Shown here: positions 31,299 to 40,518 of the stretch, piece by piece
Layout of the letters: the number at the start of each line of letters is the position of its first letter
Position numbering within the stretch: position 1 is the first letter of the stretch
From: Hyalangium minutum
GTDB taxonomy: Bacteria; Myxococcota; Myxococcia; Myxococcales; Myxococcaceae
Assembly: GCF_000737315.1 (NCBI RefSeq)
Contig: NZ_JMCB01000005.1
Coordinates: forward strand, 1-64,000
Reading direction: 5' to 3'
Length of the DNA: 64,000 bases
Position numbers and translations under genes: made by a program
Notes under the pieces: model-generated
Databases searched by the model: none
What the model was told of the DNA's origin: nothing
The model's input: only the letters and a program-made list of their open reading frames with translations

Positions 31299-31409
31299 AT
31301 GAACGACAAGGCCACCATCGAGATCAAGAAGGATGAGAAGAAGGCGGAGCCCAAGAAGGTCGTGGTCGTAAAGACCAGCATCAAGGCCGGTCCCGCGGCG
31401 TTCAACTAG
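31299..31409 (+). CDS. mccA1: Microcin-C-like precursor peptide 1 (36 aa, C-terminal Asn)
   Basis: Below the ORF-track cutoff. Translated by hand: MNDKATIEIKKDEKKAEPKKVVVVKTSIKAGPAAFN*. GGAG RBS; directly upstream of a ThiF gene. Confidence 0.9.
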   Translation: MNDKATIEIKKDEKKAEPKKVVVVKTSIKAGPAAFN

Positions 31410-31436
31410 GCCGCCCCTCGCATCTCCTGCTGTAAT

Positions 31437-38389: not shown

Positions 38390-40518
38390 GCGCCGTGGAC
38401 GCGGCCTCCTGGCCTCTGGAGCGCCTCTCGGAGGCGATGCTCGCTCTGGGCCGCTGGAGCGGGCTGGTGCCGAAGCAGGTGGAGCTGGCGCCGCCTCCGG
38501 GCTGGCTGGGCACGGGCGACCGCTATCAGCTGACGCGGTGGATCGCCGCGGCGGGCCGGTGGATCGGGGTGGACGTGGTGCACCTCGACACGCCTTATGT
38601 GGAGGTGGACTCGCTGCTGCGGGGCGCGGGGCCGGCGCTGCTGATGCTGTCGGAGAGCGATGCGCAGGTGCCGCGCTTCCTGCTGCTGGCGCGGGGCGGC
38701 CGGCACAAGGTCAGCGTCCTCGGGCCGGATCTCCAGCTCCACGCGCTGCCACTCGAGGAGGTCCGCAAGCGGCTCTGCCACCGGTTGGAGAGCCACGTCC
38801 GAAAGGATGTCGAGGAGGTACTGGCGGCCACAGGCCTGAAGGGGCGGCGCCGGCGGCGGGCCGAGGACGGGCTCTATCGAGGGCTGCTCGGATCCAGGAA
38901 CGTCTCGGGCTGCTGGGGGCTCCGTCCGCTGCCGGGGAGCGACTTCTGGCATCAGGCTCAGCAGGCCGGGCTGATGCGGCGGCTGGGCACGTTCCTGGGG
39001 GCCCATGCCCTCCAGTATGGGCTCTGGCTGGTGTCGTGGTGGCTGATCGGCAAGGCGGCGCTGGAGGGGATTCTCGCTCCAGGGTGGTTGCTGGCGTGGG
39101 GGCTCGTTCTCGCGACGGTGATTCCCCTGCGCTTGCTGGCCTCGTGGTCCGGCGGGCACCTGGCCATCCTCGTGGGCACGCTGCTCAAGCAGCGCCTGCT
39201 GGTAGGGGCGCTCAAGCTGGAGCCCGAGGAGATCCGCACTCAAGGCACAGGCCAGCTCCTGGGCAAGGTCCTCGAGTCCCAGGCCGTCGAGTCGCTCGCC
39301 ATCAGTGGAGGCCTGAGCGCGGGAATGGCTTCGATCGAGCTGCTCGCAGCGGGGCTGCTCTTCCTCGCCGCGCCCAGTGGGACGTTGTCCCTGGCGCTGC
39401 TGGTGGGCACGCTCGGGGTGATGGGGTACTGCGCGGTGCGCTACTGGCGGGCGCGCCAGCGGTGGACCCACCAGCGCCTCACCCTGACGCATACGCTGGT
39501 GGAGAACCTGCTGGGACACCGCACGCGGATCGTCCAGCAGCCTCGGGAGCAGTGGCACACCTCCGAGGATCAAGCGCTCGAGGACTACCTGGCGCCCTCC
39601 CGCTCCGTGGATCGCGCGGCGGTGGTGCTGAGCCTGCTCATCCCGCATGCGTGGCTGATCCTCGGAGTGGCAGGTCTGGCGCCTGCCTTCCTGGGCGGGG
39701 CGGCGGGCGTGTCGGACGTGGCCGTGGTGCTGGGCATCACGCTGCTGGCGTACCAGTCCCTGCGGCGGTTCGCCTCGGGACTGATCAACCTGTCGGGAGC
39801 GGGGATCGCCTGGAGCCAGATCCGCGCCATCTTCCAGGCGGCGGCGAGGCCGGAGCGGGCGGGGCACCCGGAGTTCGCGCTGGCCCGGCAGGGCGAGGCA
39901 CCCTCACATGCAGTGGTGAATGGCTCGGGGCTCGTCTACCGGTATGAGGGGCGGGTGACTCCCGTGCTGAGCGGCGCGGATCTGCGCATCCACCTCGGCG
40001 AGCGGATCCTCCTGGAGGGGCCCTCGGGAGGCGGCAAGTCCACGCTCGGCTCGGTGCTCGCGGGACTGCGCTCCCAGGAGTCGGGCCTGCTGCTCGCGGA
40101 TGGACTGGACCGCCACACGCTGGGGGATGTGGGCTGGGCGCGGCGGATTGTCTCGGCGCCGCAGTTCCACGAGAACCACGTGCTGACGGGCACCTTCGCC
40201 TTCAACCTGCTGATGGGCTGCGAGTGGCCTCCCCGTGGTGCGGACCTCCAAGAGGCGGAGGCCCTCTGTCACGAGCTGGGGCTGGGGGAGCTCCTCTCCC
40301 GGATGCCCTCGGGGCTCCAGCAGCAGTTGGGAGAGATTGGCTGGCAGCTCTCGCATGGTGAGCGCAGCCGCCTCTTCATTGCCCGGGCGCTGCTGCAGAA
40401 GTCGAGCCTCGTCATCCTCGACGAGAGCTTTGCCGCGCTGGATCCGGAGACGCTCCGGGTGGCCATGCGCTGTGTCTTCGAGCGCGCGCCCAGCCTGCTC
40501 GTCATCGCCCACCCGTAG
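38386..40518 (+). CDS. Second ABC transporter subunit lacking the C39 catalytic motif
   Basis: N-terminal domain without QxxxxDCG; TMD; NBD with GPSGGGKS, LSHGERSR and ILDES; ends at IAHP. ATGA coupled to the previous gene. Confidence 0.9.
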   Translation: MSAVDAASWPLERLSEAMLALGRWSGLVPKQVELAPPPGWLGTGDRYQLTRWIAAAGRWIGVDVVHLDTPYVEVDSLLRGAGPALLMLSESDAQVPRFLLLARGGRHKVSVLGPDLQLHALPLEEVRKRLCHRLESHVRKDVEEVLAATGLKGRRRRRAEDGLYRGLLGSRNVSGCWGLRPLPGSDFWHQAQQAGLMRRLGTFLGAHALQYGLWLVSWWLIGKAALEGILAPGWLLAWGLVLATVIPLRLLASWSGGHLAILVGTLLKQRLLVGALKLEPEEIRTQGTGQLLGKVLESQAVESLAISGGLSAGMASIELLAAGLLFLAAPSGTLSLALLVGTLGVMGYCAVRYWRARQRWTHQRLTLTHTLVENLLGHRTRIVQQPREQWHTSEDQALEDYLAPSRSVDRAAVVLSLLIPHAWLILGVAGLAPAFLGGAAGVSDVAVVLGITLLAYQSLRRFASGLINLSGAGIAWSQIRAIFQAAARPERAGHPEFALARQGEAPSHAVVNGSGLVYRYEGRVTPVLSGADLRIHLGERILLEGPSGGGKSTLGSVLAGLRSQESGLLLADGLDRHTLGDVGWARRIVSAPQFHENHVLTGTFAFNLLMGCEWPPRGADLQEAEALCHELGLGELLSRMPSGLQQQLGEIGWQLSHGERSRLFIARALLQKSSLVILDESFAALDPETLRVAMRCVFERAPSLLVIAHP

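What the first reader, a model, noticed from the sequence alone, without database searches (positions are those of the whole stretch)
31299..40518. Two-module microcin-C-like (Trojan-horse peptide-adenylate) cluster with long leaders and a peptidase exporter
Seen: [precursor1-hairpin-ThiF1-HIT] and [precursor2-hairpin-ThiF2], then HlyD, a C39-ABC and a second ABC. Both precursors end in Asn. Established: MccB-type ThiF enzymes convert a C-terminal Asn into aspartamide-AMP, which inhibits aspartyl-tRNA synthetase. E. coli MccA is a 7-mer with no cleaved leader. Inference: here 36- and 46-aa precursors are adenylated, then cut and exported by the PCAT, giving two antibiotics with different uptake peptides. 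Caveat: from memory this matches the published Hyalangium minutum mcc cluster (MccH immunity study), so the core is probably already described.
Basis: partly seen in the sequence, partly recalled or inferred. Interest (0 to 1): 0.85.

Follow-up and report, generated by a model that had tools for sequence, protein, structure and literature searches.

The report
Published Hyalangium two-peptide microcin C cluster
This is the already published and biochemically tested microcin-C-like antibiotic gene cluster of the myxobacterium Hyalangium minutum DSM 14724.

Summary
The genes on the + strand, 31299-40518, are mccA1 (36 aa), a hairpin, mccB1, the HIT gene mccH, mccA2 (46 aa), a hairpin, mccB2, a HlyD adaptor, a C39-ABC transporter and a second ABC transporter.

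The locus is already known. Both peptides are identical to the synthetic MccA1/MccA2 of Yagmurov et al., mBio 2020. All 10 gene-specific primer segments I tested from that paper match the window exactly, at my gene borders. That paper showed AMP addition by each cognate MccB and MccH phosphoramidase immunity. Export from E. coli failed and no leader cleavage was seen.

- The C39 Gln/Cys/His/Asp residues are intact.
- Nine related precursors share an invariant VKTx[IVL][KR]AG followed by hypervariable cores ending in Asn.
- More distant relatives carry canonical GG leaders.

Three things are new, though modest:
- A conserved pair of an HTTM membrane protein and a 180-aa partner (29747-31065, minus strand) travels with these clusters in three gene arrangements and occurs fused elsewhere.
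- The peptide core plus mccB behaves as a swappable cassette between a constant leader and mccH.
- Module 2 is absent from a syntenic relative.

Novelty: already known. Interest is low to moderate.

The parts
31224..31252 (+). Sigma-70-like promoter upstream of mccA1 (TTGACA-17-CATTAT)
   Evidence: It matches 10 of 12 consensus positions; the region gave 2 promoter-like hits (the other a 9/12 match on the minus strand) against 0.3 expected from shuffles. The -35 hexamer is conserved in L003 and partly in L001 and L006. This is a consensus match only.
31299..31409 (+). mccA1, a 36-aa precursor: leader M1-G31 (...VVVVKTSIKAG) and predicted core PAAFN
   Evidence: Sequence. It is identical to the synthetic MccA1Hmi peptide in PMC7157772. 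The leader/core boundary is inferred from the alignment of 9 homologues.
31437..31472 (+). Intrinsic-terminator-like hairpin with a U-tract between mccA1 and mccB1
   Evidence: Predicted fold. A hairpin is conserved at this position in L001, L003, L004 and L007. The E. coli precedent is PMC4231749.
31515..32558 (+). mccB1, a ThiF/E1-like peptide adenylyltransferase (347 aa)
   Evidence: Pfam ThiF. The family profile hits E. coli MccB best. The published primers match at both ends of the gene, and adenylation of MccA1 is published.
32555..33037 (+). mccH, a HIT-family phosphoramidase for self-immunity (160 aa)
   Evidence: Pfam HIT. F44, F91, E93, H99, H101 and K103 occupy the positions named in PMC7157772. 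The cloning and mutagenesis primers match exactly.
33154..33294 (+). mccA2, a 46-aa precursor: leader M1-G34 (...AVIVKTRIKAG) and predicted core PGGGGLVHPIAN
   Evidence: Sequence. It is identical to the synthetic MccA2Hmi peptide.
33314..33363 (+). Terminator-like hairpin with a U-tract that abuts the mccB2 start codon
   Evidence: whole 76-nt segment (33290-33365) -28.9 kcal/mol, z = -2.95, and 0 of 200 shuffles fold as well.
33363..34409 (+). mccB2, the second peptide adenylyltransferase (348 aa, 64% identical to MccB1)
   Evidence: The primers match, and specific adenylation of MccA2 is published.
34518..35693 (+). mccP1, a HlyD-type periplasmic adaptor (GTG start)
   Evidence: Pfam HlyD_3 and HlyD_D23. 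The published P1P2P3 forward primer anneals at 34520.
35690..38389 (+). mccP2, a peptidase-containing ABC transporter (C39 domain at residues 11-128, followed by TMD and NBD)
   Evidence: Pfam Peptidase_C39 and ABC_tran. Gln13, Cys19, His98 and Asp115 align with the catalytic residues of PCAT1, PDB 4RY2. They are conserved in 6 related transporters.
38386..40518 (+). mccP3, a second ABC half-transporter with a roughly 200-aa N-terminal region that matches no family
   Evidence: Pfam ABC_tran only, with nothing for residues 1-238. The published reverse primer ends at 40515.
30523..31065 (-). A 180-aa protein with one N-terminal membrane helix. It is the partner of the HTTM protein and a proposed extra member of the cluster.
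   Evidence: It matches no Pfam or NCBIfam family. Its gene neighbours mcc clusters in the window, L001/L002, L003, L006, L007, L010, L011 and the P0045 contig. It occurs fused to HTTM in P0143, P0185 and P0200.
29747..30526 (-). A 259-aa multi-pass HTTM-domain membrane protein that overlaps its partner's stop codon. It is a proposed extra member of the cluster.
   Evidence: Pfam HTTM scores 30.2 bits against a cut-off of 27.7. The AF2 model has pLDDT 81. The best fold matches are the membrane domain of human vitamin-K gamma-carboxylase, TMq 0.54-0.63.

Best explanation
This is the mcc operon of Hyalangium minutum DSM 14724, a ribosomal peptide-nucleotide ('Trojan horse') antibiotic system with two modules.

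Steps shown by published experiment on these exact sequences:
- MccB1 adenylates the C-terminal Asn of MccA1 and MccB2 that of MccA2. Each enzyme rejects the other peptide.
- The products are peptidyl-aspartamide-AMP.
- MccH hydrolyses the P-N bond of the processed warhead (aspartamide-adenylate) and so protects the producer.

Steps inferred from sequence here:
- One promoter upstream of mccA1, followed by a leaky terminator hairpin after each mccA, gives an excess of precursor transcript over enzyme transcript, as in E. coli mcc.
- The C39 domain of MccP2 removes the conserved lysine-rich leader after the invariant Ala-Gly, at ...VKTx(I/V)(K/R)AG|.
- MccP1, MccP2 and MccP3 export the products.
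- The exported molecules would be short peptidyl-adenylates: Pro-Ala-Ala-Phe-Asx-AMP, MH+ 848.31, and a 12-mer, PGGGGLVHPIAsx-AMP, MH+ 1417.64.
- Target cells would import these through peptide permeases and degrade them to the AspRS inhibitor.

The divergent HTTM/partner gene pair probably belongs to the system. Its role could be maturation, export or immunity and is not resolved.
For: Identity with the published locus:
- The peptides are identical to those printed in PMC7157772.
- 10 of 10 primer segments match exactly at the gene borders.
- Calculated masses equal the published m/z.

Enzyme family: a profile of the MccB homologues hits E. coli MccB at 138 bits, against 109 bits or less for MoeB, ThiF and E1.

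Hairpins: with the E. coli precedent PMC4231749.

Leader removal:
- The C39 catalytic Gln/Cys/His/Asp residues are present and conserved.
- In 9 precursors from 7 loci only V-K-T, A-G and the terminal N are invariant. Everything after AG is hypervariable in length and sequence.
- DNA identity to the syntenic locus L003 falls from about 96% to about 47% at the leader/core junction.
- More distant MccB-linked precursors carry canonical double-glycine leaders: L008 has LNDEELENVVGG next to a C39-ABC transporter, and L011 has EEQLEAVVGG.

HTTM pair.
Against: - Leader cleavage and export have never been observed. In E. coli expressing mccA, mccB and mccP1P2P3, only full-length or des-Met adenylated peptides were found, they stayed inside the cells, and there was no antibacterial activity.
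- The putative site is AG-Pro, not GG. Position -7 is Lys rather than hydrophobic, and Pro at P1' is unusual for a cysteine protease.
- MccA2 also contains GGGG two residues further on, so the exact cut is ambiguous.
- The conserved motif could instead, or additionally, be the MccB recognition element. The related enzyme EnfB needs a (V/I)RKA leader motif.
- The natural products have not been isolated from H. minutum, and the target organisms are unknown.
Confidence: 0.9

Rival explanations
1. The full-length 36- and 46-aa peptidyl-adenylates are the exported pro-antibiotics. Trimming is done elsewhere by a protease outside the cluster, as TldD/E trims the 42-aa Yersinia pseudotuberculosis McC. 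The C39 domain would not cut at AG.
For: Only full-length or des-Met adenylated peptides were detected even when mccP1P2P3 were co-expressed. The site is a non-canonical AG-Pro without hydrophobic residues at -7 and -12. There is a precedent for leader removal by TldD/E in an McC analogue.
Against: The C39 catalytic residues are intact and conserved in all related transporters. Conservation stops sharply at AG in both protein and DNA. Relatives have canonical GG leaders. The E. coli experiment detected no export at all, so it says little about processing coupled to export.
Confidence: 0.2
2. The conserved VKTx[IVL][KR]AG motif is mainly the recognition element for the N-terminal domain of MccB and is not a protease site. 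The leader/core boundary inferred here would then reflect enzyme binding.
For: MccB-type enzymes have an N-terminal peptide-binding domain. The related ThiF-like enzyme EnfB depends on a conserved (V/I)RKA leader motif. The motif is invariant while the PCAT sequences diverge.
Against: MccB1 and MccB2 tell MccA1 from MccA2 although both peptides carry the motif. Between the window and L003 the leader is nearly identical, while MccB is only 66% identical and co-varies with the core. That points to core rather than leader specificity. The two roles do not exclude each other.
Confidence: 0.3
3. The two ThiF genes are ordinary MoeB/ThiF sulfur-carrier activators, and the small ORFs ending in Asn are chance ORFs.
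For: The highest NCBIfam scores are to ThiF and MoeB models, all far below their cut-offs.
Against: In vitro adenylation of exactly these peptides by exactly these enzymes is published. The family profile prefers MccB by 29 bits. Precursor, hairpin and ThiF synteny is conserved in at least 8 loci. No ThiS or MoaD partner is present.
Confidence: 0.01

Closest known systems
mcc cluster of Hyalangium minutum DSM 14724 (Yagmurov et al., mBio 2020, PMC7157772)
   Same: This is the same locus. The MccA1 and MccA2 sequences are identical, the primers match exactly at the borders of mccB1, mccH, mccB2 and mccP1-P3, and the MccH residue numbering is the same.
   Different: There is no difference in sequence. 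The paper's list of cluster genes does not mention the divergent HTTM/partner pair at 29747-31065. It also does not propose a leader cleavage site or describe the cassette structure.
E. coli plasmid mccABCDEF (microcin C7)
   Same: Both have a ribosomal precursor ending in Asn and an MccB-type enzyme, which is the best PDB match. Both have a terminator hairpin between mccA and mccB. Both make the aspartamide-AMP warhead.
   Different: The E. coli precursor is a 7-mer with no leader; here the precursors are 36 and 46 aa with a conserved leader. E. coli uses the MFS pump MccC; here there is a HlyD + C39-ABC + ABC exporter. There is no MccD/E aminopropylation here. Immunity comes from the HIT phosphoramidase MccH rather than MccE-CTD and MccF.
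Yersinia pseudotuberculosis mcc (42-aa MccA, trimmed by TldD/E to an 11-mer)
   Same: A long precursor whose N-terminal part is removed to give a short active peptidyl-nucleotide.
   Different: The Yersinia product is a carboxymethyl-cytidylate, and it is processed by a housekeeping metalloprotease encoded outside the cluster. Here the product is an adenylate and a dedicated C39 peptidase is fused to the exporter.
Peptidase-containing ABC transporters (PCAT1, ComA, LahT) of class II bacteriocins and lanthipeptides
   Same: The C39 domain has the Gln/Cys/His/Asp residues, and its best PDB hit is PCAT1, 4RY2, at 6e-9. A HlyD adaptor is present, as in Gram-negative systems.
   Different: The leader ends in AG-Pro and lacks the -7 and -12 hydrophobic pattern. 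About 180 extra residues lie between the C39 domain and the TMD. A second ABC protein without a peptidase is present. Scores against the NHLP three-gene export models are far below their cut-offs.
HTTM-domain proteins in other RiPP clusters (linaridin crdG-type genes; vitamin-K gamma-carboxylase fold)
   Same: An HTTM membrane protein is encoded next to a ribosomal peptide pathway and has no known mechanism. The fold resembles the membrane domain of GGCX.
   Different: The mcc-linked subfamily is small, with 13 proteins found. It is always paired with, or fused to, an uncharacterised roughly 180-aa partner. No carboxylation substrate is evident.

Membership tests
Microcin C-type peptide-nucleotide RiPP cluster | A short ribosomal precursor ending in Asn, encoded directly upstream of the ThiF-like gene | tested here: met
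   Two such pairs are present, ending ...AAFN* and ...PIAN*. The same arrangement is found in at least 8 related loci.
Microcin C-type peptide-nucleotide RiPP cluster | An MccB-type enzyme: an E1/ThiF adenylation domain closer to MccB than to MoeB/ThiF | tested here: met
   The family profile scores 138 bits (2e-39) against E. coli MccB over positions 87-334. MoeB scores 109 bits, and ThiF and E1 score 109 bits or less.
Microcin C-type peptide-nucleotide RiPP cluster | An N-terminal peptide-clamp domain of about 100 aa preceding the adenylation domain | tested here: inconclusive
   An N-terminal extension of about 100 aa is present and conserved (WLLP, DG, W72). It does not align by sequence with the N-terminal domain of E. 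coli MccB. The structure was not modelled.
Microcin C-type peptide-nucleotide RiPP cluster | ATP-dependent formation of a C-terminal aspartamide-AMP (N-P bond, +329 Da) | not testable with these tools
   This is published for these exact peptides and enzymes. The masses calculated from the window sequence match the published m/z.
Microcin C-type peptide-nucleotide RiPP cluster | A dedicated self-immunity enzyme acting on the processed warhead | tested here: met
   A HIT protein carries the MccH-specific H99-x-H101-x-K103, F44, F91 and E93. Its activity is published.
Peptidase-containing ABC transporter (PCAT, C39) | A C39 domain with the oxyanion Gln and the Cys/His/Asp catalytic residues | tested here: met
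   Gln13, Cys19, His98 and Asp115 align to the catalytic residues of PCAT1. They are conserved in the window, L001, L003, L006, L007 and L010.
Peptidase-containing ABC transporter (PCAT, C39) | A substrate leader with a double-glycine-type motif (small residues at -2/-1, hydrophobic at -4, -7 and -12) | tested here: inconclusive
   A-G at -2/-1 is invariant and I/V/L occupies -4. Position -7 is Lys, and the hydrophobic run lies at -8 to -11. Canonical GG leaders occur in the distant relatives L008 and L011.
Peptidase-containing ABC transporter (PCAT, C39) | Leader cleavage coupled to export, demonstrated experimentally | not testable with these tools
   The published E. coli reconstitution detected neither export nor cleavage.
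NHLP/Nif11-type three-gene export system (TIGR03794/03796/03797) | Scores above the NCBIfam equivalog cut-offs | tested here: not met
   The scores are 56 against a cut-off of 156, 142 against 853, and 84 against 709 bits. The gene organisation is similar, but these proteins are not members.
HTTM domain family (PF05090) | A Pfam score above the gathering threshold and a GGCX-like membrane fold | tested here: met
   The score is 30.2 bits against a cut-off of 27.7. The nine best Foldseek hits are all human GGCX, with probability 1.00 and TMq 0.54-0.63; the next fold scores 0.23 or less. Whether the invariant Lys162 corresponds to the catalytic Lys218 of GGCX was not tested.
SdpA/SdpB antimicrobial-peptide maturation pair (a lead recalled from memory) | Sequence similarity to curated SdpA and SdpB family models | tested here: not met
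   Neither protein matched any relevant NCBIfam model at E <= 1. The resemblance is limited to the HTTM fold class.

The most novel reading that the evidence does not exclude
PCAT-type mcc systems of myxobacteria and their relatives may have a fourth, overlooked functional module. This is a two-protein membrane unit, an HTTM protein plus a roughly 180-aa partner, needed for maturation, export or self-protection. Its omission may explain why the H. minutum compounds could not be produced in E. coli. The true antibiotics would be very short (4-12 residue) peptidyl-adenylates with an N-terminal Pro. New specificities would arise by swapping a 'core + hairpin + mccB' cassette behind a constant leader.
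Probability: 0.35. Interest if true: 0.55.

Novelty: already known. Interest (0 to 1): 0.3.

Why it matters
The core finding re-identifies a validated antibiotic cluster, so it adds no new biology.

The useful residue is practical. The natural products of this cluster have never been obtained, because heterologous export failed. This analysis gives three concrete things to try:
- A predicted cleavage site and exact masses to look for.
- Two conserved neighbouring genes to add to the expression construct.
- Evidence that peptide core and MccB co-vary as a cassette. That bears on how uptake specificity of Trojan-horse aaRS inhibitors diversifies, and on engineering new peptide carriers.

Tried and rejected
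- Genome scan for MccB relatives in genome contigs and an exact 36-nt DNA search. Both found nothing, so the organism could not be named that way. Identity was established from the paper's peptides and primers instead.
- AF2 model of the 180-aa partner (pLDDT 70.7) searched against the PDB. There was no significant fold match (best E = 0.04, TM 0.16), so no function can be assigned.
- NCBIfam and Pfam scans of the partner and of ten family members. Nothing matched.
- Sequence search of the HTTM profile against the PDB. There were no hits even at E <= 10, so I could not align Lys162 with the catalytic Lys of GGCX.
- Similarity to SdpA/SdpB, a lead from memory. It is not supported.
- Membership of the NHLP export-system families. 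It is rejected on score.
- Pfam on the N-terminal 238 aa of MccP3 and on the 190-aa insert of MccP2. No family matched.
- Rfam and tRNA scans of the whole window. Nothing was found.
- The simple terminator scanner missed both hairpins because of their stem and loop geometry. Folding was needed to find them.
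Full report
**Observation**

- a 36-aa ORF, MNDKATIEIKKDEKKAEPKKVVVVKTSIKAGPAAFN (31299-31409)
- a ThiF-family gene (31515-32558, Pfam 2.8e-33)
- a HIT-domain gene overlapping its stop codon (32555-33037)
- a 46-aa ORF, MNEKTAQESQKTESPKAETPAKKAVIVKTRIKAGPGGGGLVHPIAN (33154-33294)
- a second ThiF gene (33363-34409), 64% identical to the first
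- a HlyD adaptor (34518-35693)
- an 899-aa Peptidase_C39 + ABC protein (35690-38389)
- a 710-aa ABC protein (38386-40518)

Each small ORF is followed by a strong GC-rich hairpin and a U-tract (the folded segments give -31 and -28.9 kcal/mol, z = -2.5 and -2.95). The simple terminator scanner missed both.

**Identity**

[quoted passage not shown] The paper prints the synthetic MccA1 and MccA2 peptides, and both are identical to the window ORFs.

I took the gene-specific parts of ten primers from Table S1 of that paper. They cover mccB1 forward and reverse, mccB2 forward and reverse, P1P2P3 forward and reverse, MccH forward and reverse, and the two halves of a mutagenesis primer. All ten match the window exactly and anneal at the gene borders I had called independently.

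Monoisotopic MH+ values calculated from the window peptides are 3926.2 and 4767.6, with AMP adducts at 4255.3 and 5096.6. These reproduce the published m/z. The MccH residues named in the paper (F44, F91, E93, H99, H101, K103) fall at those positions in the window protein.

Two scans of the genome collection found nothing. Identity therefore rests on the paper, but it is effectively certain.

**What is already shown and what is not**

Published experiments on these sequences show three things. Each MccB adds AMP (+329 Da) only to its cognate MccA. A succinimide intermediate is seen. MccH is a phosphoramidase that destroys aspartamide-adenylate and confers immunity.

Also published is a negative result. 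In E. coli carrying mccA, mccB and mccP1P2P3, only full-length or des-Met adenylated peptides were found. They stayed inside the cells, and there was no activity and no exported product.

'Cut and exported by the PCAT' is not. The reviews I checked do not propose a cleavage site.

**Family placement of the enzymes**

A profile of 29 MccB1 homologues hits E. coli MccB best: 138 bits, 2e-39, over positions 87-334. MoeB, ThiF and E1 enzymes score 109 bits or less. The N-terminal extension of about 100 aa is conserved within the family but does not align by sequence to the MccB clamp.

**Evidence on leader removal**

MccB1 has only 37 relatives at E <= 1e-20 among 5.8 billion proteins. I read the genomic context of nine of them and extracted their precursors.

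Nine precursors from seven loci align with only V-K-T, A-G and the C-terminal Asn invariant. The consensus is h-h-V-K-T-x-[IVL]-[KR]-A-G, where h is a hydrophobic residue. Everything after AG varies in sequence and in length, from 3 to 27 residues. Examples are PATN, PAAFN, PIHYAN, PGGGGLVHPIAN, and Pro-rich cores of 24 and 28 residues.

This is the classic leader/core pattern. AG at -2/-1 with an aliphatic residue at -4 resembles a double-glycine site, but position -7 is Lys and, in the Hyalangium subgroup, P1' is Pro.

The MccP2 C39 domain aligns to PCAT1 (PDB 4RY2) with the oxyanion Gln and the catalytic Cys, His and Asp in place. These residues are conserved in all related transporters.

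More distant MccB-linked precursors carry textbook GG leaders. L008 has ...DLNDEELENVVGG| next to HlyD and a C39-ABC transporter. L011 has ...LAEEQLEAVVGG|.

I therefore rate cleavage after AG at roughly 65%. The predicted products are PAAFN-AMP (MH+ 848.31) and PGGGGLVHPIAN-AMP (1417.64). A cut after GGGG in MccA2 would give 1092.50.

The main rivals are export of the full-length peptides followed by trimming elsewhere, as in the Yersinia/TldD-E precedent, and the motif serving as the MccB recognition element, as in the EnfB (V/I)RKA precedent.

**Regulation**

One sigma-70-like promoter (TTGACA-17-CATTAT, 31224-31252) precedes mccA1 and is conserved in L003. Hairpins follow mccA in every related locus although their sequences differ. 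This matches the ribosome-controlled terminator between mccA and mccB in E. coli, which sets the precursor-to-enzyme ratio (PMC4231749). The inference is by analogy only.

**New point 1: a cassette structure**

L003 comes from a metagenome run. It is a syntenic orthologous locus:
- AhpC, the HTTM protein, its partner, MccH, HlyD, P2, P3, the 2OG-oxygenase/WD40 protein and the cNMP-binding kinase are 88-96% identical in protein to the window.
- Its MccB is only 66% identical to MccB1 and 60% identical to MccB2.

DNA identity runs at 88-97% through the upstream genes (81-83% in the intergenic region just upstream of mccA1) and is 96% over the mccA leader. It falls to 47% in the block that begins at the leader/core junction (about 31386) and stays at 63-81% across the hairpin and all of mccB. 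It jumps back to 97-100% at the first base of mccH, about 32574.

At least three MccB lineages, each about 60-66% identical to the others, therefore sit in one 90%-identical scaffold. Core, hairpin and mccB behave as an exchangeable unit between a constant leader and constant immunity and export genes. This fits the published cognate specificity of MccB1 and MccB2.

Window 33032-34427, which is the whole of module 2, is absent from L003. All other close relatives are single-module.

**New point 2: an undescribed gene pair**

Two overlapping genes are transcribed divergently from mccA1:
- A 180-aa protein at 30523-31065 (minus strand). It has one N-terminal helix and matches no family.
- A 259-aa polytopic protein at 29747-30526 (minus strand). 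It passes the Pfam HTTM threshold, 30.2 against 27.7 bits.

The pair accompanies mcc-type clusters in three gene arrangements:
- Divergent and upstream of mccA: the window, L001/L002, L003 and L006.
- Co-directional, after P450 and GNAT genes at the end of the operon: L007 and L010.
- Directly after the HIT gene: L011 and the P0045 contig.

The word-indexed search found only 8 partner proteins and 13 HTTM proteins of this subfamily, and nearly all sit on contigs that carry MccB.

An exhaustive profile search found 152 representative partner-family proteins. These include proteins in which partner and HTTM are fused in either order: P0185, P0200 and P0143, with hhalign probabilities of 98.9-99.6%. 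The two proteins therefore form one functional unit.

The HTTM model (pLDDT 81) matches only the membrane domain of human vitamin-K gamma-carboxylase, at TMq 0.54-0.63. The partner model matches nothing.

HTTM proteins are also noted, without a mechanism, in linaridin RiPP clusters. No paper in the library links HTTM to microcins, and the 2020 paper's gene list omits the pair.

The function is unresolved and could be maturation, export assistance or immunity. Because the pair was absent from the failed E. coli reconstitution, adding it is an obvious experiment.

**Verdict**

The remaining value lies in the testable predictions above.

Noticed in passing
window 29747-31065 (minus strand): An overlapping gene pair, an HTTM-domain membrane protein plus a 180-aa single-helix partner, lies divergent from mccA1. 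The pair is conserved next to mcc-type clusters in three gene arrangements and occurs fused in other organisms. It is not part of the published cluster description.
   Followed up: yes
window 31386-32573 compared with L003 9860-11040: DNA identity to a syntenic relative is mosaic. It is 88-97% in the flanking genes and the mccA leader, and only 47-81% from the leader/core junction to the end of mccB1. The peptide core, hairpin and mccB appear to be exchanged as a cassette. mccH immediately downstream is 97-100% identical.
   Followed up: yes
window 33032-34427: The whole second module (mccA2, hairpin, mccB2) is an insertion or deletion relative to the otherwise collinear locus L003. MccB2 has no close relative among the proteins found; the best is 65% identical.
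   Followed up: partly
L008 8580-18504: A distant mcc-like cluster has a 71-aa precursor carrying a canonical double-glycine leader (LNDEELENVVGG). It also encodes an Orn/DAP-decarboxylase-like gene and methyltransferase genes (like MccE-N and MccD), an S66 peptidase upstream (like MccF), and HlyD + C39-ABC + ABC. It combines E. coli-type tailoring and immunity with PCAT export.
   Followed up: no
L007 9351-20122 and L010 6128-16477: These clusters have one MccB but, in L007, two precursors with long Pro/Gly-rich cores (for example GLPGRPGLPGLPGLPTGPGFIPIDVAN). They also encode a cytochrome P450 and a GNAT acetyltransferase ahead of the HTTM pair, which suggests further tailoring and MccE-type immunity.
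   Followed up: no
L011 9681-13913: This locus has a precursor with a GG leader, then MccB, HIT, the partner and HTTM, with no transporter within 10 kb. A second GG-leader peptide of 63 aa downstream (13722-13913) does not end in Asn.
   Followed up: no
L001 12822-13286: A DUF192 gene lies between the HlyD and C39-ABC genes in the L001/L002 version of the cluster. It is absent from the window.
   Followed up: no
window 40602-42116 and 42197-43666: Immediately downstream of the cluster are a 2OG-Fe(II)-oxygenase/WD40-repeat fusion protein and a cyclic-nucleotide-binding histidine kinase. Both are syntenic in L003, so they are probably ordinary neighbours rather than cluster members.
   Followed up: partly
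P0058 (Archangium gephyra, 150 aa): A 150-aa fragment is 77% identical to about a third of the mcc-linked HTTM protein. It lies in a complete Archangium genome and may be a remnant of a lost cluster.
   Followed up: no
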